Assembly: GCF_902459465.1 (NCBI RefSeq)
Contig: NC_047062.1
Span: 29,078,001-29,142,000 of the forward strand
Length of the DNA stretch: 64,000 nucleotides
Reading direction: 5' to 3'
DNA from: Asterias rubens
Lineage: Eukaryota
Position numbers and translations under genes: made by a program
In this document: one piece after another, positions 12,629 through 35,582 of the stretch
Layout of the letters: every line of letters starts with the position of its first letter
How positions within the stretch are numbered: the first letter of the stretch is position 1
The notes under the pieces: model-generated
The model's input: only the letters and a program-made list of their open reading frames with translations
What the model was told of the DNA's origin: nothing
Databases searched by the model: none

Positions 12629-13165
<537 letters not shown>

Positions 13166-15223: not shown

Positions 15224-18200
15224 ATGGCTGAAAACAGGAAGCTCAAAAGGGTGCCCTCCAGCATTCAAGATTCTGGGGGAATCAAAGATCCAGCGGAAGC
15301 GCTCCGTCGTGCGACGGAGACGCACCATTTTGATCCAGAGACAAGTCTTGAAACTAAAGCTGTATGCGCCCAGCCTGAGCTTAAAGGGCAGGGGCTAACT
15401 TTTCCCGTAGTGCCCTCTATCAGTGTTGCATCTACATACAGAATCAATCGAGTCGATGAGTATAATGATTGTCTAAAGGTAAGTTTGGGATGTGTGCTAG
15501 TTGCTAGGATCTGGGCCCACTGAGCAAGTATTTTGTGCCTCAGCAGAGCCTTCTCACCAACGCCACATTTCTACAGCAGTGGGGCAGGTTACTCAAGCTT
15601 GATTCTGTAGGTTTAAGTTCTGTAAGTGCTATGTAGCATTATACAATTGTTGCACGCTGTGGCAGGGTCCATGGTTTGTCCACTCGAGGGGGCAGGCCTA
15701 GGATGCCATTGCCCCTGAGGGTGTACTGTACAAAACCCATGGACCCTGTCACAGCGTGCAACAATTGTTTTCCTTTACCATGGTAATAAAAAAACAAACA
15801 TTACATGTGCCAAATATGTGCAATGAGAGCAGATAATAAAACTTTGTCCAAAACATTTTGCTTCACTATTCCCGACGGCACAACACGGAGGAGTGTAAGT
15901 GTCGTGGGTATCGAACCCAAACTCTGCTGCTGACAACACAAGTTCGTGTGAACTAGTATTCTGCTTGGCCACAGCGTGTCATGTGTTCTCATTGCTTACT
16001 TCCATCTAAATGAAAGATGAAACATTCAAAAAAACCTTTTACCCCAAAAACAAAAATATTATTTTGTATAATGTTACAACTTATGTGATTGTGTACATTT
16101 GGTTTGCGGTAACACCATATGTGTATCTACTTGCCAGGTAAAGTTTGTTCTTAGAGAACTGTCTTGCTTTATTCTACTGCCGCGGAGTAGATAATCGGGG
16201 GTTTGGGAGACTTCTCAGTTCTGAAAAGAACTGTCCTGCTTTTAACGTTTACCTGGGCGGATGGTATAGAAAATAGACTGGGACTACTGCTTTAGCTTTA
16301 TATAGGATCGTAATTAACTGTACTGCCGCAGAGTCAGTTCTGAATTGGTCTCAACGTTTTGACTAGCTTGCTCTAGTCATCGTCGGGAGACTGACAAACT
16401 TAACCTGGCAAGTAGATACACACATTGTGTTACCGCAAACCAAATATACATTGATACCTCACCATGCAATGCCTCGAATCCTATAAACTTATGTGATCTT
16501 ATCTTCCTTATAGGATGGCTACATATACAGCAGGATCGGCAATCATTCCTGTGAGTCAGCCGCTCATGCCATTAACACTCTGGAAGGAGGCCTGGGTACT
16601 TTGGTGTTTTCCTGCGGCATGGGAGCCATTACAACCACCTTACTGACTCTGCTGAAGGCTGGTGACCATGTGGTAAGATACGTTATGCTGAGACTCAAAA
16701 TGATAAACAATGAAGCTTTGTTGTGTGTAATCATTCAAGCCATAGTCTTCAACTAAACTGTTTTTATTCAGACACCTCGGTTACCGAAGTATTGGCCAAC
16801 CAGTCACAAGTACAGACTGTGACCACGTGAATATTCCGGCGCGGCATAGCTATACTACCGACGCTTAACCCAGAGCACTGCTTGGTAAAAGTTTGACCTG
16901 ATTCATTGCACAACAGGAAACATTGTAGATGCTGAATTCTCCCCAGGATTGGTCAAAATTGTTGGGTATTCTAGACACGAACTTTGGTAGCAAAGCAACC
17001 TGAATTGAAACGAGGTCATCAGAGTGTTTTCTACTTGGTGTTTATCTTGGTTTTAAAAGCCCTACCGTGCAATCTGGTACATTCTTAATGGTTTTATCTT
17101 GAGAAAACAGAATTACTGGTTGCAACCTGCTTACCAACCAAAAGGACTTGTTTACTTTGTGCATAAAATTTAATTTGATTTAGTCTGGTTGTGAAGCCAA
17201 GGACTCTGAGAAAATAACCCAATTGAGAGAAGACAAGGAAGGATGTTTCAGTTTTAGATGAGGGAGTAAAACCCAAGAGATTTGTTCCAGGGTAAACCCA
17301 TGCAGTTAGGTAGGGACTGAATTGGAAGGCGAGGAATAATCAACGCCAACTCGACCACCCAAAGTAGTTAATGACTGTTTGACCTTAACAGACTCTCTCT
17401 CTCTCAAAGGCTAAAACCATTAAGCTAGACTCTGCTAGGGTCAAACCTCAGGGGTTTAACTTGTTTAAACTCTAACCTTTGTTTTCTTCCATGGTCTAGA
17501 TCGCACCAGATTCTGCATATTCTGGCACTTACTCCGTCATGAAAACCATGCTTCCGAATTACGGTATCGAGGTTTCATTCATCAAGGCATGTGACGTTGA
17601 AGAGTACAGGAAAGCAATCAAACCAAACACCAAGTTATTCTACGGTGAAACACCCTGCAACCCATGCTTAGGTGTGCTTGACTTGAAGGCATTTGCTGAC
17701 GTCACTAAGACTGTCCCCAGTGCCATCAGTGTAGTGGACTCCACCTTTGGGTCCCCAATCCTGCAGCGCCCTCTGGAGCTTGGTGTTGACGTTGTCGTTC
17801 ACAGTTGGTAAGATTATAACAAATCTAACCACAAAACTTTACAGACTACACAGGGACTTGAATGTAAGTCTAGCGGCTAAGAGCACCTAACTCAAACTCT
17901 GGTGTTTCTGATCAGCAGAGTGTAGCTTCGAATGTAAAGCTGTTAGTCACGTGTGTTGCGTAACGCACATAAAAGAAACCAGTGCACTTGTGTTCCTGGT
18001 TTTTACATTGTCTGAGCTCACGCGCATGTTTTAACAAACAAAGAACAGCTATCGTTCAATTTGCTATTTGCTTCCAGGGGATGCCCCTTTGAAGCATGTG
18101 AGATGTCCCATGCAAGGGGTTGTTCGTTTTTGGAACGCGGTCAAATGTCAAGAAATGGATTGGTTTGCTGGACATTGTTTACCAAACACAACTTTTCCTG

Positions 18201-21200
18201 TTTGCTTTTTCCATATGTATATTTCCTTCTGTTTATATCTTGCCACAGTACCAAGTACATGGGTGGACACAGTGACATTGTTGCAGGTTCTATGAGCACC
18301 AAGGATGAAGAGATTCTATATGGGATCAAAGCGTTTCAAGGACAAACAGGAAGCTGTCTGGTATGTAGTCAAAGATAATAATAATAATAATAATTTGGGG
18401 GGCTAATCATTCTTACTCGCAGCTAAGAGCTGAATTGCGAAGGATGCGGCTACAGCGTGTTCGAGAAGCAGGCATGCAAGGGCGCCTTTGGCTGCCAGCC
18501 ACATCAACCCATTATGACCACGGAGCACAGCCAAGATCGAAAGTGTTTGATTTTTCCAGAGGGAGGAAAACCGGATGGTCTGGAAAACCCTTGTGGCACA
18601 GCAGAGAACCAACGCATAACTCAACTCACATATGGCCCCGGCTGGGAATCGAACCGAGGTCACCTTGGTGAGAGGCGAGCGCATTACGCAAACGCCAACC
18701 ATGACACCCTGAAAGCCTCTCATTAAAGTGTAGAATTCTCACAGCTGAACACAGCAGACGCATAACTCAATTCACATATGGCCCCGGCCGGGAATCGAAC
18801 CGAAGTTACCTTGGTGAGAGGCGAGCGCATTACGCACACGCCAAGGTCACCTTGGTGAGAGGCGAGCGCATTACGCACACGCCAACCATGACACCCTGAA
18901 AGCCTCTCATTCAAGTGTAGAATTCTCACAGCTGAACAGGGCCAATATTTATGGCCCTGTTTAATTGCTTAATTCTGCACTTACGATTCTCCACTTACGA
19001 TTCTCCACTTACGATTCTCCACTTGCAGGGCAAACACAAAAATTCTGCACTAAACGTTGATTGCCTAGTAAGCCAAAATTCCCAAAGGCTGAACAAATTT
19101 TCTAAGATGAGTGAACTCATTCCTGTTTTTTCGGTTGATATGTTTGGTTGATACAAAAAACTTAAATATTTGAATTAATTAGTGACTTTGTAGGTCAGCT
19201 ACGACTTGAGCAAGTTGGAGTGCCCACATTTAGTCGACCCTTGATTGACCACTGACCAGCAACGTATATCACAGGGACGCACTCTATTGCCTTCTGCCTT
19301 TTTTCTATAGTGTCACTGGTTCTCTTCTGCGCGTTGCACATGTACTGTTTAGCGAGGAACAGGCTATCAGAACGCTGGTTCCCAATTGTTGACCAAAGCA
19401 GTCAACACGTGGTCGACCACCCTAGGTTCGAGTCAAAATAGTGAGCCTATAGTTAACCATGGTGCACACTCGAACTTGCTCTAGGGTTTCGTTGCACATG
19501 GTTAACACATTTCTGCTATAAAATAATGAGCAAGTAAACCCATCTTGACCATGTTAGTGTTTGAATTTCCGACAGGCAAATAATGTTTTGTGCTGAGCTG
19601 ATTTTTGCACTTGAACATCTCTATGGAACTGAAATCAGAATTAGACTGTTTCCTACACCAAATAGCTAAAACTTTAATTCAAATTCTGAACTGATTGAAT
19701 TTTTATTTTATACTTTTTGCGCAGTCTCCGTTTGACGCCTTTCTGCTCCTACGTGGAATCCGCACTTTGCCCCTTCGTATGGAGAAGCACAGCCTAAACG
19801 GACTTAGACTAGCTCAGTACCTGGAACAACATCCAAAGGTGAGATAGTAGTTTCAAGTCATAACAAAAAGAAATTCTACAAGCTTGAGACATGCATTGAT
19901 GACATCAAGACATGGATGTTGGCAAACAGTCTCAAGTTAAACGACAGCAAGTCTGAATTCATCCTGTGTGGTTCTAAACAACAACTTGCCAAGTTCAATA
20001 TCCCCAGCATCAGGATTGGACACTGTCACATCTATCCTTCCAATAAATGTCGCAACCTTGGTATCACCTTTGACTCCCACATGTCCCACGTCAATCAGAT
20101 AGAAGCAGTGTGAAAATCAGTCAGATTTCATCTCCGTATTCTGGGCTTCATCCGAAAATATCTCAATCGTACCGCTACGGAACAAATAGTCCATCCATTT
20201 ATTACATCTCGCTTAGATTTCTGCAATGTATAACCTCCCGCAACACCAAATAAACAAACTTCAACGCCTACAAAATGCAACTGCTCGCCTCATCACCTTA
20301 ACCAGACGCTCCACCCATATCACCCCCGTCTTAAAGTCCCTCCACTGGCTTCCCATCATTGATCGCATCGCCTTCAAGATCCTCACTCTCGTTTTCCAGT
20401 CACTTCAAGGAAATTCACCGGACTACATGACAGACATCATCAGTCGACATCTACCGTCACGTAGCCTTCGTTCAAGCAGCGCCCTGCAACAGACTGTCCC
20501 CCGCACCAGTCACTCTTGGGGAGATCGGTCCTTTTCACATGCTGCTCCCAAACTCTGGAACAATCTACCCCTTGAAATTCGTCATTTTCGTTATTATTAT
20601 TATTATTATTATTATTAAATCAAAATGGTTTTGTTTATCATTCGGCAAAGACTTGCGCCCGTGGCTGCCTCATCCTCAAATTGCACACAACGCAAAGATA
20701 GAGCTTCATCGACCTCACTGAGGGCCCTGTCGTCCCAGTAAGGGCGTTGTTTCATGAGTCGTGCGATTTGGAACATGGTGATTTTAGTTGACTTGACCTT
20801 GGTACCTTTTATTATGGTTTATATTTTATTGTGAACTTTGTGAGTGCTATTGCATGTATGAGTTAGCATTGTTTTATACAGTATTATGGTGTTCATGTAT
20901 CTTTTTATCATATGGCTTTGATTTCAATTTTGCTTATTTTTACTGGAGAACTTTTTCTGAAACTTTTTCTGTGTATTTTTCTTACTGGTATTTGTACTGT
21001 TATGCGCCCTCGAACAGGCTGGTCCTTGAGAGAGCACAACATAAATTCATGTTTTTATTATTATTATGATCCATACTGTCCTACAGATAAGCCGAGTGTT
21101 CTACCCAGGTCTACCATCACACCCCCAGCATGACGTAGCCAAGAAGCAGATGTCTTCCTTTGGTGGTATGATCGTCTTTGAAGTAGCTGGAGGACTGCAG

Positions 21201-22901
21201 CCTGCTAAGACGCTGGTAGAAGTAAGTCGAGATTGAAACTTTACATGGTGGATGTAGAACCATAAGAGAGGTTTGCGGTAATACTCTTTTTGAGTAGTGT
21301 TTGTTCGGAAAAGGACCATGGCCAGTGGTTAACGACTCAACAATTAGTAAGCTCCCATCATTTCTCCTGAAGATGATTAGAGCATACTAAGCGAAACACT
21401 GAGTCGTTAACCACTGGTCCTTTTCAGAACCAACCTACTCAAAAAGAGTAGTTACCGCAAACTGGTGTTACTGCAAACCTCTCTTAGGTAGAAGTAAGTC
21501 ATTGAAAACAAGCTGCTCAGTATACAAATATGAAGACCAAAATGTGCATTTTTTTGTTTCTACTTCCTTTCTCTGGTGGAAATATGTTGTCAACGTACAG
21601 TGAGTTGCAAAAAACAAAGTGAGGTTCCTTTTATATTTGTCGTAAATAGTCATGAGAGTTGCATTTGGTTCACCAAGCAGGTATTCACGACTATTTTTTT
21701 GGTTGTAGTGGTGGCACGATTAACTGAGTAGCTAATAAACAGTAGTCGTGACTCGACTAAGCAATCAATAGTCAGGACTTCACTACTAGTCGTACTAGTC
21801 GCCCAGGCTTACACCTCGTATTATTTTGAGGGGTGGTATTATGTTTCTATTTGATTGTAATTTCTCCGGTCCACAGTCGTTGAAACTCATCACCCTGGCT
21901 GTGTCACTGGGTTCTACAGAGAGCTTGATTGAGCATCCAGCCACTATGACCCACGGCCCGTTACTCATGACTCCAGAAGACAGACAGAAAGGGGGTATCT
22001 CTGATGGGCTTGTACGACTCAGGTAACTTCTAGTCTTAATTCAAGGACCACTTTGTGGCCACCACCTCCATGACCTGTTCTCATTCCCTTCCTCCTGCCC
22101 TCAACACCCACCCCTCACACAAACACTTGGGTTGGGGAGGATGGATTATTCAGACAGTCGGTGAAATAAGGAAAATTAATTTGAAAGCAGGGCTACCAAC
22201 TCTCCCTGAATCTACAGAAAGTTCCCTGAAAACAATCTTTCAATGTTCTAATGGACAAATTTGATTATGGAAACGTTTTCCCTCAATATGTTGATTGTAA
22301 TTCTAACCTGACTGCAGGCCCATGAATTTCAAAATTAAAATGGCCTTGCCCTCTCCAAGATGACCTTTCCAGACCTGTGACTGTTGTACAAAATCCATAC
22401 AGTTATATATAAGAACTAGAGGGTGCACGAGTGATGCTTCGTGCACAGACACGACGGGACCGCAAGATGACAAGCGCGTCATTCTGCACTCGCGTTGAAT
22501 ATGAAATACACGTTTGAGGTTTTTTTATTGAACGCTCATGCGATGCTGTTTGTTCAACTTACAAAATGGCCGCACAAACACACGCTGTGAGATGCCAGTT
22601 TTGTCAACTTAGAAAATGGCCGCCTGCGCACATGCCGGAGCGCGTATATAGGCTAGTGCGCCCTCTAGTTCTTATATATAACTCTATGACAAAATCTCAC
22701 TGACTGCAAGTGTTCACAGCTCTGATTGAAATTGTACCCTTTTAATGATGTGTTATACACACTGTGTACTCTGTTCTTTCTGCATCCTACCTGGTTAGAA
22801 CTAAAATTGTTATGTTCACATTGTGGGTTTTTTTCAGTGTTGGTATTGAGAATTCAGTCGACCTCATCCGAGATCTGGAACAAGCTCTAGCTAAAGTGTG
22901 A
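15224..22901 (+). CDS. PLP-dependent Cys/Met-metabolism gamma-lyase (methionine gamma-lyase-like / cystathionase-like), about 430 aa
   Basis: Eight phase-consistent exons: 15224-15478, 16514-16672, 17500-17807, 18249-18360, 19725-19838, 21087-21221, 21877-22022, 22838-22901. Motifs: [39 protein letters not shown] (PLP lysine), [32 protein letters not shown]. Confidence 0.95.
15643..15768. repeat. Intronic 126-bp hairpin or small MITE
   Basis: 32-bp arms ACAATTGTTGCACGCTGTGGCAGGGTCCATGG and CCATGGACCCTGTCACAGCGTGCAACAATTGT with one G-T pair. Confidence 0.8.
16090..16490 (-). mobile_element. Family K Penelope-like repeat with inverted terminal segment and a decayed hammerhead motif (16350-16389, minus strand)
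   Basis: 16092-16138 is the inverted copy of 16403-16450. Minus strand reads CTC-CCGACGA-T-GACTAG-AGCAAG-CTAGTC-AAAAC-GTT-GAG. Confidence 0.6.
17875..18010 (+). mobile_element. tRNA-derived SINE fragment
   Basis: GCGGCTAAGAGCACCTAACTCAAACTCTGGTGTTTCTGATCAGCAGAGTGT matches the head of the 52877-53230 SINE. Confidence 0.65.
18380..18940 (-). mobile_element. tRNA-derived SINE with a locally duplicated head
   Basis: Minus strand reads GTAATGCGCTCGCCTCTCACCAAGGTGACCTCGGTTCGATTCCC...CATATGTGAGTTGAGTT...GGTTTTCCTCC. The GTCACCTTGGTGAGAGGCGAGCGCATTACGCA block appears three times. A related copy lies near 44725-44860. Confidence 0.7.
19875..20615 (+). mobile_element. 5'-truncated L2/CR1-group LINE fragment (RT C-terminus) in intron 5 of the lyase
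   Basis: [28 protein letters not shown] and [50 protein letters not shown]. There is an in-frame stop at 20111, and the fragment is followed by a (TTA)n run. Confidence 0.88.
21255..21485 (+). mobile_element. Family K palindromic element with a hammerhead-like motif (21364-21403) in its loop
   Basis: About 75-bp inverted arms (GAGGTTTGCGGTAATACTCTTTTTGAGTAG...CAGTGGTTAACGACTCA and TGAGTCGTTAACCACTGG...CTACTCAAAAAGAGTAGTTACCGCAAAC) enclose CTC-CTGAAGA-T-GATTAG-AGCATA-CTAAGC-GAAAC. Confidence 0.65.
22396..22688. mobile_element. MITE with CAT...ATG ends and an 8-bp TSD (P-element- or hAT-type)
   Basis: About 33-bp TIR CATA(C/G)AGTTATATATAAGAACTAGAGGG(T/C)GCAC. The direct repeat ACAAAATC lies at 22388-22395 and 22689-22696. 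Confidence 0.85.
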
Positions 22902-23009
22902 ATAGAAATTAAACACAGGTAACCGTGTTTATCCAGCAAGTTATTCAAATCAAAGAGTGACAGGATTCAGTTCTAACTCCAAAGGAAATGATTCTTCTGG
23001 ATCTGGATA

Positions 23010-26720: not shown

Positions 26721-29700
26721 ATGGAGACGAAAAGTGCGATTGTCCTCATCGCTGCGTCTGTCATTCTACTGTTTGCTCTGCCCGTTCTACAAATTCTGGC
26801 ATTTGCCCTGCTCATCTTCATCATTGGAACTGTTGTCATGACATTGATACAAGATGGTGACCCCCTGCTTATGTTTTACGAGCAGTTTGGTTCAAGCGGA
26901 TGTAAGTTTATGAACGGGTCACATTTGAAACAACTAATTTTCATCACTGAAAAAGTGTACTAAATGGCACCTCATCTTTTGTCAGATACCCACATTGTTA
27001 GAGTTGAATAAATATTTGTTTTGCAGTCACAGGAATTGTAAATTAACAATGATGCAATCCACCACTGCTGGAAGAACAAACTGGTGACCCCCATGCTTAT
27101 GTTTTACGAGAAGTTTGGTTCAAGTGGATGTAAGTTTACGAAGGGGTCACATTTGAAACGCCTAACTTTCATCACTGACAAAGTGTACTAAATGGTACCT
27201 CATCTTTCGTCGAATACCCACATTGTTAGAGTTGAATAAATGTTTTTTTCACAGTCTCAGGAATTGTAAATTAACAATGATGCAATCCACCACCACTCCT
27301 GGAAGAACAGAATGGAAGGAGGGGAACACACAAGGCGGATGCAAAGTCAACTTTTTGAAGCTCTTTTCAAAGCTTTGCATTGTGGAAGTATAGCGTTCTC
27401 CTGAAGATCAGAGCATGTTAGATTGAAAGGTTGAGTCGTTGACCACCAGTTCTTTTCAGAACAAACACTACTTAAAGCTATTGGACCCTTTCGGTAAACA
27501 GTATTGTCCAAGGCCCACACTTCGTGTATCACAACTTCTATATCAAATAACAAACCTGTGAAAATTTAGGCTCAATCGGTCATTGGAGTTGGGAGAATAT
27601 AACGGGAAAACCCACCCTTGTATCCGCACATTTCGCCGTGTCATGACATGTGTTTAAAATAAATCCATAATTCTTGATATCAAGAATTTATATTGTTTTA
27701 CTGTTTTCTCAAAAAGTAAAGCATTTCATGGAATAATATTTCAAGAGAAGTCTTTCACCAATACCTTCTGTAAACCATGTAAAGTATTTGTAAATCTGTG
27801 AATTTTTTTTTTTCCTGTACCGAAAGGGTCCAATGGCATTAAAAGAGATATTCACATGGTGTTATCGCAGACCTGTCTTAGTATTTCTTTGTTCCCAATA
27901 ATAATAATTAGCACTATGTTTCACTGTAGCACATTTGAGAGGCAAGGTTGCGTGGGTGACTGGAGCATCAAGTGGCATAGGAGAAGCTCTCTGCTATGAA
28001 TTAGCAAAAAAGGTACTCGTATGTTTGAAATGTAGCTAGATAAATGCAAAAAATAGTTGATGCCCTGACGCTTTGAAGCTTTCTCTTTAACCTTCGAGAA
28101 AGACTACGCTTTGGTCGAAATGTCAGGCCATCAATTATTTTTTGCGTTTATACCATTTGTCTTTTTGGTTGGTAAACAGTTTGCAACGGTGTGCAACAGC
28201 TAGGTCTATTTTCCCATAGCTAGATAAATATGAGATGAAAATTCTGCTAGGAACCAAGACGCAAAGAAAAAGGAGCGATCAAAGCAAAATGAGGCGTTTG
28301 TCAACCCAGGTCATTTTTCGTTTTTGTTAATACATTTGAAAATAACCCACAATCTCTACTTAAAGCCATTGGACACTTTCGGTAAACAGTATTGTCCAAG
28401 GCCCACACTTCGTGTATCACACCTTATATATAAATTAACAAACCTGTGAAAATTTAGGCTCAATCAGTCATCGGAGTCGGGAGAAAATAACGGGAAAACC
28501 CTACCTTGTTTTCGCACGTTTCGCCGTGTCATGACATGTGTTTACTATAAATCCGTAATTCTCGTAGTCGAGAATTGATAATTGTTTTAATGTTTTCTCA
28601 AAAAGTAAAGCATTTCATTGAATACTATTTCAAGAGAAGTCTTTAACCATTACCTTCTGTAAACCCTGTAAGTTATTTGTAAATCTGTGAACTTTTTTTT
28701 GTTTCTGCTCCGAAAGTGTATAATGGCTTTAAGTACTGTAAACCTCATGTTTTAATGGTTTTGGTTCCGATACAACTTGGTTTTGATAACTGGGCAATTC
28801 AGAAGAGATGTAAAAGATCGCAGATTTCTAGCTGTTTGATACTCCTGAACTGAACTTTGAAGATAAACAGGGGCAATGCCATAGATACACACCTTTGTAA
28901 GTGAGAACCAAACTTTCAAATTGTATTCTATTAATAAGTGTTGGCAACCAACGTTGTGTCTTTTAGGGTGTCAAGTTAATTCTATCAGCTCGAAGAGCGA
29001 AGGAGCTGCTACGAGTTAAAGAACGATGTGTAGAAGAGTTTGGTCTCAGAGATGATGATGTGCTCGTCTTACCACTTGATGTTCTTGACTATGAGTCTCA
29101 CCCAGGATGCGCCCAAAAGGCACTGGACCATTTCCACAAGGTAATGTCTGTTCATTTGTTGGGTGAGACTATTCAGTGTTTAATCCAAAATTTAAAGCAT
29201 ACTTGGTTGTTTGATTGTGGGTTTTTTTTTTTTTTTTTTTTTGTTGTTGAGTTAATTGGAGTATTGGGTTTGTATTTGACAAGGACCCATGGTTGAATGA
29301 TTTGAGTATTAGTGCAACTCAAATATGGGGGAAAATCCACAAGGCCACATAGCTTGTTGCCCAAAATGTTTGTGGCGTGTCGTGGCCGCAGTCTAGTTCA
29401 CGAGACATTGTCAGCAGCAGAGTTTGGGAAGGTGCATTTTGCTCTACCAGCCAGGCTCCTAGTGGATGATACCCATGCCTACATCCATATGGACTTTGAA
29501 GGGGGTAACCCTGTTTCAGCCCCAGGAGTAGGTAGCGACGTGCCACTGGTGGCAGTTGCTTTGGCTCGATAACCTAAATCACTTAAGTGTAGCCCTCACC
29601 TTGAAGTGGCCGTCCGGATGTTAGGCGATCTATTGAAAGGCACTGGACACATTTGTAATTGTCAAAGACCTGTCTTCTCACTTGATGTATCTCAACATAT

Positions 29701-32700
29701 GCATAAAATAACAAACCTGTGAAAATTTGGACTCAATTGGTTGTCGAAGTTTCGAGTGAGTTATGGTAGAAAAAACACCCTTGTCGCACAAGTTGTGTGC
29801 TTTCAAATGCTTTGAATTCAAGACCTCAGCTGAGGTCTCTTATTAAATTCAAATATTTTAGTGAGAATTTACTTCTTTCTAAAAAACTAGGCTACTTCAG
29901 CGTGAGCCGTTTTTCACAATGATTTATACTATCAACAGCTCCCCATTGCTTGTTACCAAGTAAGTTTTTATGCTAACAATTATTTTGAGTAATTGCCGAT
30001 AGTGTACAGTGCCTTTAAATATCATGATTTGATTTAGTAATCTTTGTTGCGCAACACTTTTAGGTTGACATCCTGGTAAACAACGCAGGGCGATCACAGC
30101 GAGCTCTCGCTGTGGATACCAGCCTGGAAGTAGACAGGGCCCTTATGGATGTAGACTTTATAGGTCAAGTCTCAGTAACCAAGGCCATTCTGCCTCATAT
30201 GATGTCTTCCAATCAAGGTCACATCGTTAACATCAGCAGTGTCACCGGCAAATTACCCACAGAAATGTCTGCAACTTACTCAGCATCTAAACATGCTCTC
30301 CATGTAAGTATTCTTTGGCTGCAAAGTCCATAGAAATTTGCTGAAACTTACAACCTAAAAGCTATTATTCCTATTAACAGACGTTGCAAATGACCCTTGT
30401 ACTGGGCCCAATTGCATTAAGGCTGTAAGCACAAACATTTGCTTAGCACAGAAAAAGTATTGCTTAACAGAAACAGGTTACCAGCAAAAATTACATTTAG
30501 TTTAAACTGATGTGCCTGGTGCCCCACTCAATTTTTGCTCAGCAACAAAATTTGTCAAGCAGTATTTTCTGCTTAACGGCTTTATAAAATCTCGTCTCTG
30601 GCAAATGTGGCCCTGGTTTGATGTTTGAGATTTGTATTGTGACACAGTTAAGATCAGTCTTAGCTCTTTGTACAATCGGTCCCAGGGACCTGCTAAAAAT
30701 ACCACTAATTTTATCTTCTATAAAGGGAAACCTGTGTGATCTTTCTTATGTAGCAATGTTCTTTGTTTCCTCCTTTTTGTTTTGCACAAGCAGGGTTATT
30801 TTGGAGCACTTGCATATGAAAACTCGGCTTTGACTGTCACCAATGTCTGTCCTGGTCCAATCGTGAGCAATATCATTGAGAACTGCTTTGGAAACAATCT
30901 TCAACAAGTAAGTGGCTTAAAGCATGAAACAACGGAGGGACACCCTCAATCTTCTTTGTTCATTATTCTGCTTCTGGCAGTTCTTCTTGAAATGTTTCTC
31001 AGGTTAATTGGTTTGGAGTGGCTAGTTTTCGTCAACAATGATCCCTCTAAAAGACACTGGACACTGTTGGTAGTTACTCAAAATAAGTGTTGGCATAAAA
31101 ACTTACTTGGTAATGAGCAATGGAGAGCTGTTGATAGTATAAAACATTGTGAGAAACGGCTCCCTTTGAAGTAATGTAGTTTTTGAGAAAGAAGTAATTT
31201 CTCAGTAAGAGGTCTCGAATTCAAGGCATCTGAAAGCACACAACTTGTGCAACAAGGGTGTTTTGTCTTCCATTATTCTCTCACAACTTTGACAACCAAT
31301 TGAGTCCAAAATTTCACAGGTTTGTTATTGTATGCATATGTTGAGATACACCAAGTGAGAAGACTGGTCTTTGACAATTACCAACTGGTGTAGGGCCTTT
31401 GACAAGCCGAAGTGTTAAGAATAATTAGTGTTGTCGACTCAAGTCGGTGACTTGGACTTAAGTCAGACTCGAGTCGCCAATATCATCGCCTTGTGATTGA
31501 CTTGGGGAAAATTACTTGAGACTTGAACAATTGAATAAGCTTGATTTTACATAAAATTAAAAAAAATTGGGGTTAAGTTCCTGTTGGAAAGTTTGTACAA
31601 AACCGATGTTAGCTGTTGCCAAAAAACAAACAAAAGAGGGACAATAGTAGAGTGACTCGATTGCAGGTGAAGAGCTGTACTTGTGTGCATTAATTGTCTA
31701 AAAAGCAATAACTCAAAAAGGACTTTATAACACCAACTAAAAATTTGATGTGTTGATTGGTTTTGGGATCCCCCAGAAGCCTACTGTTTTTAGACCCCCT
31801 TCGTCAAATATCAAGGTAATTTTGAAAAAAGAAAGTTTGTCCAAACTATAACTCAAGACGAATAAGATTGAATGTCAGCGAGGCGTTTTGGTTTGTCAAC
31901 ACATCACTTTTTTTTTTACCATCAGCCCAAGTTTAAAGAAACCACATTCAAAGCTGAACGTAATTCAAGCATGATGATGTCGACAGAGCGCTGTGGTTTC
32001 CTGATTGCTGTTGCCATTGCAAACAACTTATCCGAGGTGTGGATCTGCAAAGGTCTTGTTCTATTGTTGATGCAGATGTATCAGTGGTGTCCTCTTATGA
32101 CTAGATGGTAAGCATTTCATTCTTAGAGTAACATCATTTCAGACAAGTGCTTCAGAGTTGCTCCGAACTAAATTCTGAATTAAGTACATGAAAAGTTGAT
32201 TGTCTAAAACAGTTAGGTGCGACTGTACAAGCTAGAAGTCGAAAGATCGAGTGTTGCAATCGTTCAGAACGACTCTGGAGCGCCTTGGTTTCAGACGTCC
32301 AACTTTTCCCGAGCCAAGTCAATCTAATTGTTGTGTTAAGTTCACCTGTCTGAAACAAAAAGTTATTTGGGTTGACCTAGAGTCAGTCCTAATCTATTTG
32401 GTTTGGCGCGACTCTGGCGCGCTTGTAAGAGAAGAGTGTAAGTTGTTTAACATTTACTTTTGTCGTGTTCAGTTCAGCCTCGCTACCATGGGCAGCGCGC
32501 CGTATCGATACCGCTCGTCACTAACCCCTGGGAGGTATGTACTGGGAAACAACTCTGATTGGCTCAGGAAATTGGTTAAAGTCACCTGGAAATAGATTTT
32601 TTTTTCTTTCAAACATAAGAGTATATGCTTAGGAACAATAAAACAATTTTTTTAGTAATTGTTTGTCACGATTTATATGTTTAAAAAATATACAAAGTTG

Positions 32701-35582
32701 TTTGGGGGGCTGACTCCGCCTACCCCTTTTGTGACATCAATCGAGGCAGACTTTGCCTGCAATGCGTATAGTAAACACACGTGCAAAGTACATGTACGTC
32801 CAAGTCGTGAGTTGGTACATTTCAAAAAGTGTTTTTCTGCATTCAGCAGCAATACACCTGGTCGATATTGCCGGGAAAAAAAATATATATCTTTTTGAAA
32901 CGTACAAACTCACGACTTGGTCCGTACATGTACTTTGCAATTGTGTTTACTCTACGCATTACAGGTAAAGTCTGCCTCGATTGACGTCACGGACAGCGCC
33001 CTCTCGGGTCGGGTCTACTCTTAAATTTGTAAATACATAAGAACTGATTTTTTTAAACCTCAGTTAACTGTTTATTCACATTCCACTCATCAAAACACAT
33101 ATATTAGTGACAAAGCTTTATTTTGAAAAAATACCACTTCCAGGTGACTTTAAGCATAAGATGACAAGTGAGTGCGCACGTAGTTTTTAAGATATTTTTC
33201 TGTTGATCATGCCCACGTTTTTTATGACAAGAAAACGTTTTTTAAAAACAAAAACAAAAACATTCTTTAAGACGAAAAACATGCGTGCGCGCGTAGACAA
33301 AATTGAAAAAATGGAATAATGAATATGTACGCTCATTTATGGCTCATTTAAATGTGCTAGCATATAGCACATTCAAATTTGCCAATTCCAGGGGTTATGA
33401 TCGAGCAAGGCATGCTGGGAAAAAATGGCGCAGTGAGATCGATCACCCCTGGGATTGAGGTTGTGTTCAGTTAGCCTGGTACTTGAATTTTTTTGTAGTC
33501 TGTCATCAGCATTTTCTAATGTTCGTCTTGTCCTTGTTTCGTGATTATTTTGTAATGTTCATGTATATTTGGTGTGCGTTAACACCATGTGTGTATCTAC
33601 TTGCTGGGTAGATTATGTTCTTTTGAGAACTTGCCTTACTTTCTATTCTACTACAGCGCAGTAGATTTTTTGGAATTTATGAGGCTTCTCTACTACCGTA
33701 GAGTAGATTTTCAGAATTCAGGAGACTTCTCAGTTCTGTAAAGAACTTTCCTTATTAACTACAAACTTGATTGGTGGAAGGTAGAAAATCAGCCGGGACT
33801 ACTAGCTTTAGTGGATCAAGGCTTCTCTTTATTAATTTCACTACCACGGAGTGAGTTCTTAAAGGCAGTGGACACTATTGGTAATTACTCAAAATAATTA
33901 TTATCATAAAACCTTACTTGGTAACGAGTAATGGGGAGAGGTTGGTAGTATAAAACGTTGTGAGAAACGGCTCCCTCTGAATTGGAGTAGTTTTCGAGAA
34001 AGAAGTCATTTTCCACGAATTTGATTCCGAGACCTCAAGTTTAGAATTTGAGGTCTCGAAATCAAGCATCTGAGAGCACACAACTTCGTGTGACAAGGGT
34101 GTTTTTTCTTTCATTATTATCTCGCAACTTCGATGACCAATTGAGCTCAAATTTTCACAGGTTTGTTATTTTATGCATATGTTGAGATACACCAAGTGAG
34201 AAGTCTTGTCTTTGACAATTAGCAATAGTGTCCATTGTCTTTAATTGAACAATTTGACTAGCTTGCTGTAGTCATGGTCAGCAGGAGATGAAAACAAAAA
34301 GAAACAAAGAAAAACTAACTAAGAGTGGGACTTAAGCCTGTGACCTCCAGATTAATGTGCTGGTGCTTTACCAACTGAGCTATCTATTGCCAACATTAAG
34401 GTTGGACTAGCGCAGTTGGTAGAGTACCGGCATGTTAATGTGGAGGTTGCAGGTTCAAGTCCTGCTCCATCCCTTGTTTTCGGTCTCTCTATAAGCCTTT
34501 TTGAGGTATGGCGGACACAATGCTACAACACTGTAAAGTTAGGGTAAATTTGTGCGTATTGACCACAGAAATAGAACGTATGTTATTCAGTGAAGTGCGC
34601 ATTTTAGGCGACGCGGCGTTTACACGTAAACCTAATGACCACCAACATGGTGAGCGTGGCATCAGTCGCGGCGTGTGACGCGTGCGTATCACGTCCGCCA
34701 TACCTCAAAAAGGCTTATTGGGGCTGGATAGCTCAGTTGGTAGAGCGCCGGAACATTAATCCGGAGGTCGTTGGTTCAACTTCCGCTCCAGTCATTTTTT
34801 CTTTGTTCAAACCCATGCAACGAAAATCTTAAGATTAATCTTAGTTCTTTGTGAAACTGGCCCCTGCTACAGTTATAAGAATACCAGTATGTTTTAAATG
34901 TTGTTTATTGTCAACACTTTATGCTTATAATGTGTTTCAGGTTGAAGGAAAAAGTGTATGCTGATAAGAGAATCCGAGAATTCAAGAAAAGTCAGGTAGT
35001 TTGCCCCAGTTTTTACATAAAATACTTCGGCTATGGCTAGGGCACGCGTCTGCTATTCTTCAACACTGACAGACGCGCTGTTCTAGCCATAGCTGTAGCC
35101 AAAGTCGCCAATATGGACACGGCCTTAATAATAGTTACAACATTTATAGAGCGCTTAATACAAATGTTTCTAAGCGCAATAACCAGACGAATCAGATTGA
35201 CAAAACAGATGGGTTTTAAGTAATGGTTTAAACATGTCCAATGAAGGTGCTGCTTGAGTGTGGGTGGGTAGCTTTGGGTGGGTAGCTTGTTCCGAAGTGT
35301 TGGAGCTATGACTGAGAAAGCAAGATGGCCATAGGGTGTCATAGTGCGGGTCCCGAGGAAAGCTGGAAATGAGTGATGGAAGGGAGCAAATGCGTCGGGT
35401 AGCGGATGAAAGTGAATATGAACACAGGGCTAAGAGATCTTGGAGATGTACTAGGGCAAAATTAGAAACAACTTTATACACAAGAAAACAAATTTTGAAA
35501 CAGAAATCGGCGAATGTTTACCTTGATCTTTTTCTTGGTTCCCTCCTTCTCTGGTAACCAGGAACAATCTCTCGAAGGATAA
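26721..35582 (+). CDS. DHRS7: Dehydrogenase/reductase SDR family member 7-like, about 350 aa
   Basis: Exons 26721-26901, 27930-28012, 28967-29140, 30064-30303, 30794-30907, 31926-32107, 34941-34995 and probably 35562-35582 (alternatively read-through to TAG at 35040). N-terminal hydrophobic anchor plus DGDPLL, VAWVTGASSGIG, LILSARR, DILVNNAGRSQRA, YSASK, VCPGPI and MSTERC...EVWI, which are characteristic of DHRS7. The last exon is less certain. Confidence 0.9.
26856..27310 (+). repeat. 228-bp tandem duplication spanning the DHRS7 exon 1 / intron 1 boundary
   Basis: TGGTGACCCC...TTTGGTTCAAG(C/T)GGATGTAAGTTTA...CAATCCACCAC occurs at 26856 and 27082. The donor sites are at 26902 and 27130. Confidence 0.9.
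27476..27838. mobile_element. MITE family D (Kolobok-type), inserted in a family K remnant (27390-27870)
   Basis: TTAA|AGCTATTGGACCCTTTCGGT...CCGAAAGGGTCCAATGGCA|TTAA. Family K sequence resumes after it. Confidence 0.85.
28045..28150 (+). ncRNA. Hammerhead-like motif (28091-28127, non-canonical core) in the loop of an inverted repeat
   Basis: CCT-TCGAGAA-A-GACTA-CGCTT-TGGTC-GAAAT-GTC-AGG. The arms are GCAAAAAATAGTTGATGCCCTGAC and GTCAGGCCATCAATTATTTTTTGC. Activity is unknown. Confidence 0.45.
28364..28728. mobile_element. MITE family D
   Basis: TTAA|AGCCATTGGACACTTTCGG...CCGAAAGTGTATAATGGCT|TTAA. Confidence 0.88.
29638..30014. mobile_element. MITE family A
   Basis: AGGCACTGGACAC...AGTGTACAGTGCCT|TTAA. 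Confidence 0.8.
30403..30600. mobile_element. MITE family H
   Basis: GGGCCCAATTGCATTAAGGCTGTAAGCAC...GCTTAACGGCTTTATAAAAT. Confidence 0.6.
31052..31398. mobile_element. MITE family A
   Basis: AGACACTGGACACTGTTGGTAGTTACTCAAAAT...GACAATTACCAA. Confidence 0.8.
32475..33463. mobile_element. TIR element with a 9-bp TSD (Mutator-like), containing nested family F MITE
   Basis: Ends CAGCCTCGCTACCA...TGGGATTGAGGTTG. The direct repeat TGTTCAGTT lies at 32466-32474 and 33464-33472. A short relative sits at 59142-59295. Confidence 0.82.
32580..33149. mobile_element. MITE family F (Kolobok-type)
   Basis: TTAA|AGTCACCTGGAA...TTCCAGGTGACT|TTAA, with an internal inverted repeat of about 110 bp (32731-32990). 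Confidence 0.85.
33565..34290 (-). mobile_element. Family K remnant split by a family A MITE
   Basis: Colinear with 16092-16390 on both sides of the 33863-34240 insertion. Confidence 0.6.
33863..34240. mobile_element. MITE family A with both TTAA target copies intact
   Basis: TTAA|AGGCAGTGGACACTATTGG...CAATAGTGTCCATTGTCT|TTAA. Confidence 0.9.
34325..34475. mobile_element. Two divergent tRNA-derived SINE heads
   Basis: Minus-strand head at 34325-34390 (ACCAACTGAGCTA on the plus strand). Plus-strand head at 34400-34470 (TAGCGCAGTTGGTAG...GGTTCAAGTCC). Confidence 0.6.
34491..34718. mobile_element. MITE with perfect 26-bp TIRs
   Basis: ATAAGCCTTTTTGAGGTATGGCGGAC and GTCCGCCATACCTCAAAAAGGCTTAT. 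Confidence 0.85.
34722..34794 (+). pseudogene. tRNA-Asn-like cloverleaf (anticodon ATT): tRNA pseudogene or SINE head
   Basis: Acceptor stem GGCTGGA/TCCAGTC, D stem GCTC/GAGC, anticodon stem CCGGA/TCCGG with loop ACATTAA, and a weak T stem. A T6 run follows. Confidence 0.55.
35130..35470 (-). mobile_element. L2 LINE 3' end fragment
   Basis: Frameshifted LQDLL.., YGHLAFSVIAPTLRNKLP and AAPSLDMFKPLLKTHLF. Tail is GCGCTTAGAAACATTTGTATTAAGCGCTCTATAAA..TATTATT. Confidence 0.75.

What the first reader, a model, noticed from the sequence alone, without database searches (positions are those of the whole stretch)
15224..22901. Intron-containing animal gene that looks like bacterial methionine gamma-lyase rather than cystathionase
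Seen: [55 protein letters not shown] and [12 protein letters not shown]. From recall, Pseudomonas putida MGL has [38 protein letters not shown] and RAVSLG. Animal CTH has GLAATVTI, GMVTFYIKG and LAESLG, whose Glu binds cystathionine. Here that Glu is Val, as in MGL. However, the MGL-specific Cys of the YGC motif is Gly (AYSG), and the MGL KD pair is not evident. There is also an N-terminal extension of about 40 aa with a basic RKLKR patch. Inference: this is a second, MGL-like trans-sulfuration enzyme of unknown specificity (methionine to methanethiol, homocysteine or cysteine to H2S, or a sulfoxide or seleno substrate). It may be anciently retained or horizontally acquired. Similar cystathionase-like genes are annotated in some fish and invertebrates, but I know of no biochemical characterisation.
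Basis: partly seen in the sequence, partly recalled or inferred. Interest (0 to 1): 0.72.

Follow-up and report, generated by a model that had tools for sequence, protein, structure and literature searches.

The report
Starfish methionine-lyase-like enzyme of archaeal kinship
The starfish Asterias rubens has an intact, expressed gene for a vitamin-B6 sulfur-amino-acid lyase that is not the usual animal cystathionase: it belongs to an old, untested enzyme group shared by many marine invertebrates, amoebae and Asgard archaea, and probably splits methionine-like substrates.

Summary
Eight GT..AG exons (15224-22901, + strand) splice to a 430-aa protein identical to RefSeq "L-methionine gamma-lyase-like [Asterias rubens]". 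RNA contigs and reads cross the predicted junctions.

- **Not recent gene transfer.** Orthologues occur in sponge, corals, bryozoan, molluscs, annelid, nemerteans, echinoderms, acorn worm and amphioxus. Five introns are shared by all seven animals mapped, and three more by most.
- **Its own clade.** Animals form one clade (99/95). With Amoebozoa and Asgard archaea they form a 100/100 clade, separate from bacterial methioninases and from the MetB/cystathionine-lyase clade. An AU test rejects joining animals to that clade (p=0.026).
- **Catalytic residues intact.** The three residues that bind cystathionine in human CGL are I89, S150 and V370 here, as in methioninases. The methioninase YGC and KD motifs are absent, and no NCBIfam cut-off is reached.

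So this is a distinct, uncharacterised subfamily. It most likely gamma-eliminates methionine or homocysteine rather than cystathionine.

Two gaps remain. No metazoan CTH sequence could be fetched, so none is in the tree, and a separate CTH gene in this genome was not checked. I found no paper on the animal genes.

The parts
15224..15478 (+). Coding exon 1 (aa 1-85). It holds a poorly conserved N-terminal extension, including MAENRKLKR, and the start of the N-terminal domain. Donor is GTAAGT.
16514..16672 (+). Coding exon 2 (aa 86-138). It holds Y90 and R92 (PLP-phosphate contacts from the neighbouring subunit), I89 and I93 (the sites of human CGL E59 and S63), GNHS in place of GNPT, and GMGAIT.
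17500..17807 (+). Coding exon 3 (aa 139 to the first two bases of codon 241). It holds Y145-S146-G147 (the MGL 'YGC' site, codons at 17518-17526), S150 (the site of CGL R119) and D218-S219 (VDSTF). In other animals this exon is split by an intron at about aa 183 that Asterias lacks.
18249..18360 (+). Coding exon 4 (last base of codon 241 to aa 278). It holds S240-C241-T242-K243; the PLP Schiff-base lysine codon is at 18253-18255. FQGQTG stands where methioninases have the KD pair.
19725..19838 (+). Coding exon 5 (aa 279-316), [15 protein letters not shown].
21087..21221 (+). Coding exon 6 (aa 317-361), [10 protein letters not shown]...[11 protein letters not shown].
21877..22022 (+). Coding exon 7 (aa 362 to the first two bases of codon 410). 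It holds A369-V370-S371 (V370 codon at 21901-21903, the site of CGL E339), the animal-only two-residue insert after MTH (GPLL) and R408 (alpha-carboxylate binding, 22015-22017).
22838..22901 (+). Coding exon 8 (last base of codon 410 to aa 430, plus the stop codon).

Best explanation
This is the single Asterias rubens gene for a 430-aa pyridoxal-phosphate (PLP) enzyme of the Cys/Met-metabolism gamma family. It is intact, transcribed and spliced. It belongs to a distinct, biochemically untested subfamily found across marine invertebrate phyla, whose nearest relatives are in Amoebozoa and Asgard archaea. It was already present, with about eight introns, in the common ancestor of protostomes and deuterostomes, and probably in the first animals. 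It was lost, as far as the hit lists show, in vertebrates, arthropods and nematodes. Inferred mechanism, from family chemistry rather than from any result here: K243 holds PLP as an internal aldimine. The substrate's amino group displaces it. K243 abstracts the alpha and then the beta proton. Y145 protonates the gamma leaving group. The aminocrotonate is released and hydrolyses to 2-oxobutyrate and ammonia. The distal-substrate pocket is apolar (I89, I93, M121, S150, V370), which closely matches the changes that convert human CGL into a methioninase. The preferred substrate is therefore most likely methionine or homocysteine (giving methanethiol or H2S), or a similar uncharged thioether or selenoether, and not cystathionine.
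For: Gene model and identity to the RefSeq protein. Transcription and splicing: a 1358-nt RNA contig with 0 mismatches spans exons 3-8 at my junctions, and raw RNA-seq reads cross three junctions. Family: PF01053, E=1e-132. Catalytic set Y90, R92, Y145, D218, S240, T242, K243 and R408 is invariant or nearly so across 50 sequences. AF2 model has pLDDT 92.3. Distribution: echinoderms (all five classes), molluscs, nemerteans, annelid, bryozoan, hemichordate, amphioxus, corals and a sponge. Introns: five positions and phases are shared by all seven animals mapped, and three more by most. Tree: animals 99/95; animals + Amoebozoa + Asgard 100/100; the CGS/CGL clade 100/99 lies outside. AU test against animals + CGS/CGL gives p=0.026. 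Asgard members come from several lineages, and one sits on a dense, intron-free contig of prokaryotic, probably archaeal make-up (aldehyde:ferredoxin oxidoreductase and a Trm5-type methyltransferase among the neighbours). The Acanthamoeba gene has introns and eukaryotic neighbours. Substrate pocket: at the sites of human CGL E59, S63, L91, R119 and E339 the starfish has I, I, M, S and V. The engineered human methioninase hMGL-4.0 carries E59I, S63L, L91M, R119A and E339V, and E59, S63 and E339 coordinate cystathionine (PMC7293657). Solved MGLs score 348-363 bits against 304 for human CGL.
Against: No enzyme of this clade has been assayed, so substrate and reaction type are inferred. The protein lacks the two methioninase motifs: YGC is YSG and KD is QG (PMC11568061). 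It is below every NCBIfam cut-off (MGL 400-403 bits against 550-666; a CGS model reaches 390 against 513). Overall identity to characterised MGL, CGS, CBL and CGL proteins is nearly flat at 39-44%. Echinoderms have GNHS for the conserved GNPT, and most of the clade has VDSTF for VDNTF; the effect of either is unknown. No metazoan, fungal or plant reference enzyme is in the tree. The AU rejection is only moderate. The base of the 100/100 clade is unresolved, so the direction and number of transfers among Asgard archaea, Amoebozoa and animals are open. Absence from vertebrates, arthropods and nematodes rests on top-120 hit lists only.
Confidence: 0.6

Rival explanations
1. It is mainly a hydrogen-sulfide-producing desulfhydrase, acting on L-cysteine by alpha,beta-elimination or on L-homocysteine. 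Its role would be sulfide signalling or sulfur handling in marine, often sulfide-exposed, invertebrates, rather than methionine cleavage.
For: Gamma-family enzymes are promiscuous, and bacterial relatives named 'bifunctional CGL/homocysteine desulfhydrase' score 365 bits. The methioninase-specific Cys and KD pair are missing. Members occur in the chemosymbiotic hosts Solemya and Gigantopelta.
Against: The apolar pocket matches the changes that raise methionine activity in human CGL (PMC7293657). Nothing in the sequence favours Cys over Met or homocysteine.
Confidence: 0.15
2. It is a divergent paralogue of animal cystathionine gamma-lyase (CTH) that still works mainly on cystathionine.
For: UniRef names several members 'cystathionine gamma-lyase'. 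Identity to animal CGL is 40-42%, close to the 43% for the best MGL. It has Gly at the MGL Cys site and Gln where methioninases have their KD pair, as in the CGL-type rows of the alignment.
Against: The E59, R119 and E339 equivalents are I, S and V. The CGS/CGL clade is separate at 100/99, and forcing a union costs 60 lnL, p-AU 0.026. No animal CTH appears among the 120 best hits of any member, while many bacterial MGLs do.
Confidence: 0.08
3. It is a biosynthetic gamma-replacement enzyme, like cystathionine gamma-synthase or O-acylhomoserine sulfhydrylase, that makes homocysteine or cystathionine.
For: CGS and sulfhydrylase HMMs score nearly as well as the MGL models (390 and 358 bits against 400-403). 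H. pylori CGS is 44% identical.
Against: By general knowledge, animals are not known to make O-acylhomoserine. The protein lacks the R119-type Arg found in all five CGS/CGL-clade rows. It lies outside that clade.
Confidence: 0.07
4. It is a recent horizontal acquisition from bacteria, or bacterial contamination of the assembly.
For: The best named non-animal hits in the first search were bacterial MGLs at 45-53% identity.
Against: It has seven spliceosomal introns. It lies on a 33.8-Mb chromosome record between animal genes. Spliced RNA is present. Orthologues in nine phyla share intron positions. The animal tree mirrors the species tree, with Cnidaria, Ambulacraria and Lophotrochozoa each supported at 99-100.
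Confidence: 0.02

Closest known systems
Bacterial L-methionine gamma-lyase (methioninase, EC 4.4.1.11; e.g. Fusobacterium nucleatum 6LXU/7BQW, Citrobacter freundii 2RFV, Pseudomonas putida 1GC0; NCBIfam TIGR01328)
   Same: Same fold and catalytic set. It is the best-scoring solved structure (363 bits) and the best NCBIfam model. It shares AVSLG (Val and Ser at the CGL Glu339 site), Ile at the E59 site, and a hydrophobic residue at the S63 site.
   Different: It lacks the YGC Cys (Gly147) and the KD pair. It is below the model cut-offs (400 against 550 bits). It falls in a different, strongly supported clade. It has introns, an N-terminal extension, VDSTF for VDNTF and an animal-only two-residue insert after MTH.
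Unnamed 'trans-sulfuration enzyme family protein' of Asgard archaea (Heimdallarchaeia: Hodarchaeales, Kariarchaeaceae; also Thorarchaeota) and of Amoebozoa (Acanthamoeba, Physarum, dictyostelids)
   Same: It is in the same 100/100 clade, at 46-51% identity. Shared traits are VDSTF, Gly at the MGL Cys site, AVSLG and no R119-type Arg.
   Different: Those proteins keep GNPT, YGGT and the Lys of the KD pair, and have Trp at the S63 site. They lack the animal two-residue insert and Cys241. None has been characterised. Acanthamoeba introns are at other positions.
Animal cystathionine gamma-lyase (CTH/CGL, EC 4.4.1.1; human P32929, PDB 2NMP)
   Same: Same family and fold, 40% identity. It has Gly at the MGL Cys site and Gln where methioninases have their KD pair.
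   Different: The residues that bind the distal half of cystathionine, E59, S63, R119 and E339 in human CGL (PMC7293657), are I, I, S and V here. The score is lower (304 bits). The protein lies outside the clade that holds bacterial CGL and MetB.
Engineered human methioninase hMGL-4.0 (hCGL E59I/S63L/L91M/R119A/K268R/T311G/E339V/I353S; PMC7293657)
   Same: The starfish protein naturally carries equivalents of five of these eight changes: I89, I93, M121, S150 and V370. It has them on a scaffold that also lacks the bacterial Cys. This shows that methionine cleavage does not need that Cys.
   Different: It is a natural protein of separate descent. The other three positions were not mapped, and activity is untested.

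Membership tests
Cys/Met-metabolism PLP-dependent enzymes (Pfam PF01053, gamma family of fold type I) | Full-length match to the family model above the gathering score | tested here: met
   442.7 bits against a cut-off of 27, residues 59-427
Cys/Met-metabolism PLP-dependent enzymes (Pfam PF01053, gamma family of fold type I) | Catalytic and cofactor residues: Schiff-base Lys in S-x-T-K, Asp to the pyridine N, stacking Tyr, carboxylate-binding Arg, and Tyr and Arg from the partner subunit | tested here: met
   S240-C-T242-K243, D218, Y145, R408, Y90 and R92 are invariant or nearly invariant in 50 sequences
Bacterial methioninase (MGL, TIGR01328 / EC 4.4.1.11) | Score above the curated equivalog cut-off | tested here: not met
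   TIGR01328 scores 399.8 against 549.7; NF004876 403.2 against 666; NF005695 383 against 666
Bacterial methioninase (MGL, TIGR01328 / EC 4.4.1.11) | YGC motif (Cys116 of P. putida MGL) | tested here: not met
   The motif is Y145-S146-G147. Gly occupies this site in 29 of 31 animal rows. Motif as defined in PMC11568061.
Bacterial methioninase (MGL, TIGR01328 / EC 4.4.1.11) | Lys240-Asp241 pair | tested here: not met
   FQG-QTG aligns to VKDITG / LK-DIG
Bacterial methioninase (MGL, TIGR01328 / EC 4.4.1.11) | Val-Ser at the site of CGL Glu339-Ser340 (AVSLG) | tested here: met
   A369-V370-S371. Val occupies this site in 28 of 31 animals and 15 of 17 rows of the bacterial MGL clade.
Bacterial methioninase (MGL, TIGR01328 / EC 4.4.1.11) | Placement inside the clade of named bacterial MGLs | tested here: not met
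   It lies in a separate 100/100 clade with Amoebozoa and Asgard archaea. The named MGLs (Salmonella megL, Fusobacterium, Caldanaerobacter and others) group elsewhere.
Bacterial methioninase (MGL, TIGR01328 / EC 4.4.1.11) | Methionine alpha,gamma-elimination activity | not testable with these tools
   Needs an enzyme assay
Metazoan cystathionine gamma-lyase (CTH) | Cystathionine-binding residues E59, R119 and E339 (human numbering) | tested here: not met
   They are I89, S150 and V370 here. The CGS/CGL-clade rows have D/E, R (5/5) and E/D. Roles per PMC7293657.
Metazoan cystathionine gamma-lyase (CTH) | Nesting within the metazoan CTH clade | tested here: inconclusive
   No metazoan CTH sequence could be fetched by reference. 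As a proxy, the protein lies outside the clade of bacterial CGL and MetB (100/99), and a forced union gives p-AU 0.026. No animal CTH appears among the best 120 hits. Human CGL scores 304 bits against 363 for MGL.
Metazoa-Amoebozoa-Asgard 'MGL-like' clade (unnamed) | Tree placement | tested here: met
   UFBoot 100 / SH-aLRT 100 for the 67-row clade; animals within it 99/95
Metazoa-Amoebozoa-Asgard 'MGL-like' clade (unnamed) | Shared sequence traits: VDSTF (Ser after the PLP Asp), Gly at the MGL Cys site, AVSLG, no Arg at the R119 site | tested here: met
   S219, G147, V370 and S150

The most novel reading that the evidence does not exclude
The enzyme is the missing C-S lyase of ovothiol biosynthesis in animals, a functional stand-in for bacterial OvoB that cleaves 5-histidylcysteine sulfoxide. 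No OvoB-like protein has been found in metazoans other than Hydrozoa. OvoA is reported from sponges, placozoans and anthozoans through protostomes and deuterostomes, with losses in Nematoda, Arthropoda and Vertebrata (PMC8433421). That pattern resembles the one seen here for this PLP C-S lyase. Against it: the pocket is apolar, whereas the substrate carries a charged histidine moiety; the reaction is a beta-elimination rather than a gamma-elimination; and the clade also occurs in Asgard archaea and Amoebozoa. A less exotic novel reading, more likely at about 0.3, is that the gene descends vertically from the Asgard-related ancestor of eukaryotes and survives only in Amoebozoa and animals.
Probability: 0.05. 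Interest if true: 0.85.

Novelty: new variant of a known kind. Interest (0 to 1): 0.6.

Why it matters
To my knowledge (not checked in the literature here), methionine gamma-lyase is usually described as an enzyme of bacteria, anaerobic protists and plants, and animals are thought to handle sulfur amino acids through CBS and CTH. This gene shows that many marine invertebrate phyla keep a second enzyme with a methioninase-like pocket. That gives a direct route from methionine or homocysteine to 2-oxobutyrate plus methanethiol or H2S. It bears on sulfur cycling, sulfide and methanethiol production, and redox chemistry in marine animals. The natural sequence also shows methioninase-type pocket residues in an animal protein, which is relevant to the effort to engineer human CGL into a therapeutic methioninase. 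Its nearest relatives are Asgard archaea and Amoebozoa, which makes it a candidate case of an archaeal-type metabolic enzyme surviving in animals. None of this has been tested biochemically, and I found no paper on it.

Tried and rejected
1. **Per-exon NCBIfam and PDB scans** gave only mixed family names. The full-length protein was needed.
2. **Library search with exon 3 alone** found the family, but the window's own protein had to be recovered through a sea-urchin hit.
3. **Metazoan CTH for the tree.** No tool returns one by reference, the three protein searches list only the best 120 hits, and typing a sequence from memory was not acceptable. The tree therefore lacks metazoan, fungal and plant references.
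It returned only ordinary bacterial relatives at 42-49% identity, so it says nothing on how rare the Asgard-type gene is.
5. **Loci not on record.** The coral (Pocillopora) and sponge (Corticium) loci were not available, so intron positions outside Bilateria are untested.
6. **Acanthamoeba introns** share no position with animals. This neither supports nor refutes common eukaryotic descent.
7. **ESM Atlas search** added nothing beyond family names.
8. **One literature search** was badly framed and returned irrelevant papers. Searches for animal MGL-like genes found only plant and diatom papers.
9. **Second copy in the window.** It was suggested by a VVVHS match at 49301 and rejected by tblastn.
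10. **RKLKR patch as a targeting signal.** It is not conserved among echinoderms, and no targeting prediction was run.

Full report
**1. What is in the window**

The + strand between 15224 and 22901 carries eight open segments whose translations match Cys/Met-metabolism PLP enzymes. I placed the borders by reading the junctions. All seven introns are GT..AG, with phases 0, 0, 2, 0, 0, 0, 2.
- The exons are 15224-15478, 16514-16672, 17500-17807, 18249-18360, 19725-19838, 21087-21221, 21877-22022 and 22838-22901.
- The spliced CDS is 1293 nt. Its 430-aa product is 100% identical over its whole length to P0181, NCBI 'L-methionine gamma-lyase-like [Asterias rubens]'.
- The gene lies on chromosome record LR699092.1 of assembly GCA_902459465.3. 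It sits between a 166-aa PF06541 ORF and a short-chain dehydrogenase gene.
- There is one copy in the window.

**2. It is expressed and spliced as modelled**

I laid RNA data on 17400-22950 (5551 letters, within the operators' limit).
- A 1358-nt contig of an RNA run covers exons 3 to 8 with no mismatch and exactly these junctions.
- Raw RNA-seq reads of two 2026 runs cross 19836>21085, 21221>21877 and 22018>22834.
- Depth over the exons is low.
- The very deep stretches (17772-17957, 18330-18701, 22422-22793) are intronic repeats, and most reads there fit only in part.

**3. Family and active site**

Pfam PF01053 matches residues 59-427 at E=1e-132. An AlphaFold2 model built on 50 relatives has mean pLDDT 92.3, and only the first few residues are disordered.

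The catalytic set of the gamma family is intact and invariant or nearly so across the alignment:
- K243 in S240-C-T242-K243 (Schiff base)
- D218 (pyridine N)
- Y145 (stacking, general acid)
- R408 (carboxylate)
- Y90 and R92 (phosphate of the partner subunit)

**4. MGL or CTH?**

Whole-sequence similarity hardly decides.
- Solved MGLs score 348-363 bits. Entamoeba and Trichomonas MGL score 325-329, human CGL 304 and P. putida MGL 295.
- Against Swiss-Prot models, identity is 43% to Fusobacterium MGL, 44% to H. pylori CGS, 40-42% to animal CGL and 39% to P. putida MGL.
- NCBIfam's MGL models are best (403 and 400 bits) but far below their cut-offs (666 and 550). A CGS model is close behind at 390.

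The diagnostic residues are more telling. PMC7293657 reports that E59, S63 and E339 of human CGL coordinate cystathionine and that R119 anchors that network. It also reports that E59I, S63L, L91M, R119A and E339V, with three further changes, turn human CGL into a methioninase.
- Counting from the invariant YSR, YxGT, D, K and SLG landmarks, the starfish has I89, I93, M121, S150 and V370 at those five sites.
- In my alignment the five rows of the CGS/CGL clade have D/E, a polar residue, R (5/5) and E/D at the E59, S63, R119 and E339 sites. Bacterial MGLs have I, L, A/S and V.

On the other side, the two motifs used to define methioninase, YGC and KD (PMC11568061), are absent.
- The starfish has YSG, and FQG-QTG stands where methioninases have VKDITG.
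- Gly at the Cys site is found in 29 of 31 animal rows and in all Amoebozoa and Asgard rows.
- The Cys is not universal in my sample of the bacterial MGL clade either (9 of 17).
- hMGL-4.0, as listed in PMC7293657, cleaves methionine without any change at that site.

**5. Phylogeny**

The tree has 95 rows and 395 columns, built with IQ-TREE under LG+C20+F+G4 (PMSF). Support is given as UFBoot/SH-aLRT. The bootstrap had not fully settled (correlation 0.987).
- **Rows.** There are 31 named animal proteins, 9 from Amoebozoa and 7 from Asgard MAGs. Five come from unnamed prokaryotic contigs and 14 are transcripts of unknown origin. The rest are named bacterial MGLs plus reference genes read from annotated records. 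The references are E. coli MetB and MetC, Paracoccus MetB, a Nostoc 'cystathionine gamma-synthase' next to a cystathionine beta-synthase gene, Salmonella megL, Leisingera MGL and a Bacillus O-acetylhomoserine sulfhydrylase.
- **Animal clade.** All animals plus eight unknown transcripts form one clade (99/95). Inside it, Cnidaria (100/100), Ambulacraria (99/96) and Lophotrochozoa (99/96) follow the species tree.
- **Wider clade.** Animals, Amoebozoa and Asgard archaea form a 100/100 clade whose base is an unresolved comb.
- **Next out.** The nearest outside group is a small bacterial set (Thermoguttaceae, HR08, Blastocatellia; 99/98). The MetB/CGL clade is separate (100/99).
- **AU test.** Forcing animals together with that clade costs 60 log-likelihood units, p-AU 0.026.
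- **Gap.** No metazoan CTH is in the tree, because no tool would give me one by reference. No animal CTH appears among the best 120 hits of the urchin, sponge or amoeba proteins, while scores of bacterial MGLs do.

**6. Age and origin**

Orthologues named by NCBI or UniRef occur in the following groups:
- Echinoderms, all five classes
- Molluscs: bivalves, gastropods and a chiton
- Two nemerteans
- Capitella (annelid)
- Watersipora (bryozoan)
- Saccoglossus (acorn worm)
- Branchiostoma (amphioxus)
- Three scleractinian corals
- Corticium (sponge)

I mapped the exons of seven of them onto their own genomic loci.
- Five introns sit at the same alignment column and phase in all seven: Asterias, Strongylocentrotus, Anneissia, Branchiostoma, Crassostrea, Liolophura and Lineus.
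- A sixth is at the same place give or take one gapped column.
- Two more are shared by most.
- Asterias has lost the intron at about aa 183, and Lineus the one at about aa 123.

The gene, with about eight introns, therefore predates the protostome-deuterostome split. With the coral and sponge members inside the animal clade, it probably dates to early Metazoa. All animal rows also share a two-residue insert after MTH, and 28 of 31 have Cys in HS-C-TK. Recent transfer from bacteria, or contamination, is excluded.

The non-animal relatives were the surprise.
- **Amoebozoa.** Members are Phalansterium, Pyxidicula, Physarum, Ceratiomyxa, four dictyostelids and Acanthamoeba. The Acanthamoeba gene has eight introns and eukaryotic neighbours.
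- **Asgard archaea.** MAG proteins come from Kariarchaeaceae, Hodarchaeales, 'Heimdallarchaeota' and Thorarchaeota.
- **A prokaryotic contig.** One unnamed member sits as an uninterrupted ORF on a dense contig. Its neighbours include an aldehyde:ferredoxin oxidoreductase and a Trm5-type methyltransferase, so the contig looks prokaryotic and probably archaeal.

Whether eukaryotes inherited this gene from their Asgard-related ancestor, with many later losses, or whether it moved between these groups cannot be told from the unresolved base of the clade. Acanthamoeba introns share no position with animals. No other eukaryotic supergroup showed up in the lists, which fits either reading.

**7. Mechanism**
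- **Shown:** an intact PLP gamma-family active site, an apolar distal pocket, and the lack of the cystathionine-binding triad.
- **Inferred from family chemistry:** an internal aldimine at K243, transaldimination, alpha and beta deprotonation, gamma-elimination with Y145 as the acid, and release of 2-oxobutyrate, ammonia and a thiol.
- **Most likely substrates:** methionine and/or homocysteine.
- **Also possible:** cysteine desulfhydration, a gamma-replacement role, or another thioether, selenoether or sulfoxide substrate.
- **Unknown effects:** echinoderms have GNHS for GNPT, and the clade has VDSTF for VDNTF. Three of the 31 animal rows have Phe for the catalytic Tyr, one of the two S. purpuratus genes among them, so some duplicates may have changed function.

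**8. Novelty**

The gene model and its name are in RefSeq, so the existence of the gene is not new. In the paper library I found nothing on MGL-like genes in animals. The phrase 'methionine gamma-lyase-like' occurs only in plant and diatom papers. Nothing links this group to Asgard archaea either: the 2024 metagenomic methioninase screen does not mention eukaryotes, animals or Asgard.

It fails the defining tests of both bacterial methioninase and animal CTH, and it forms its own well-supported clade. I therefore rate it a new variant of a known kind.

**9. A speculative lead**

PMC8433421 states that no OvoB-like lyase has been found in metazoans other than Hydrozoa, and that OvoA was lost in Nematoda, Arthropoda and Vertebrata. 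The distribution seen here is similar, and the enzyme is a PLP C-S lyase. The apolar pocket, the gamma-type chemistry and the presence of the clade in Asgard archaea argue against this, so I give it about 5%.

**10. Limits**
- There are no biochemical data.
- No metazoan, fungal or plant reference is in the tree.
- Absences rest on top-120 lists drawn from 8000 scored candidates.
- A canonical CTH in A. rubens was not looked for, because no tool allowed it.
I did not test it.

Noticed in passing
window 12629-13129 (-): A single-exon 166-aa ORF, called as a gene in the public record, matches Pfam PF06541 'putative ABC-transporter type IV' (35 bits against a cut-off of 25.9). This small membrane-protein family is, as far as I know, mainly bacterial (not checked here). 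It lies 2 kb upstream of the lyase gene on the other strand.
   Followed up: partly
window 18330-18930 (intron 4), 17772-17957 (intron 3) and 22422-22793 (intron 7): These are dispersed repeats. Two adjacent copies give near-identical ORF peptides (…[17 protein letters not shown]…) on the - strand. RNA depth is in the thousands, and most reads fit only in part, so they are abundant transcribed repeat families and not part of the gene's mRNA.
   Followed up: partly
window 19916-20618 (intron 5): ORFs that looked to me like a retroelement remnant (130 aa: …[32 protein letters not shown]…), read by eye from the ORF list only. Trinucleotide runs flank it at 18365-18403 and 20579-20627. An RNA contig with many mismatches maps here.
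   Followed up: no
window about 26721-32901 (+): The next gene downstream encodes a 349-aa short-chain dehydrogenase/reductase (PF00106, PF13561) according to the public gene call.
   Followed up: no
L004 (Strongylocentrotus purpuratus, P0173); alignment A1 columns 101-200: One of the two sea-urchin paralogues has Phe in place of the catalytic Tyr (PVFGGTY). Three of the 31 animal rows have Phe there. Some duplicates may have lost or changed gamma-elimination activity. Echinoderms often carry 2-3 paralogues, while this window has one.
   Followed up: partly
L001, L003 and the other animal loci: Asterias lacks the intron at about aa 183 that six other animals share. Lineus lacks the one at about aa 123. 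These are clean lineage-specific intron losses.
   Followed up: yes
L099 6645-15331 (-): In amphioxus, a 1076-aa gene with Death and faint ROC/COR domain hits lies on the opposite strand inside the long intron of the orthologous lyase gene.
   Followed up: no
L016 (JGI metagenome contig, 92.6 kb): A member of the same clade (P0206) sits among dense, uninterrupted ORFs, including an aldehyde:ferredoxin oxidoreductase, a Trm5/TYW2-type methyltransferase, isocitrate dehydrogenase and gamma-glutamyltranspeptidase. The contig looks prokaryotic, probably archaeal. In the quick tree P0206 groups with named Asgard MAG proteins (87 SH-aLRT); in the careful tree it is unplaced at the base of the 100/100 clade.
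   Followed up: partly
L009 1196-3706 (Nostoc plasmid): A gene annotated 'cystathionine gamma-synthase' directly follows a cystathionine beta-synthase gene. This suggests a reverse-transsulfuration cystathionine gamma-lyase. I used it as the bacterial CGL proxy in the tree.
   Followed up: no
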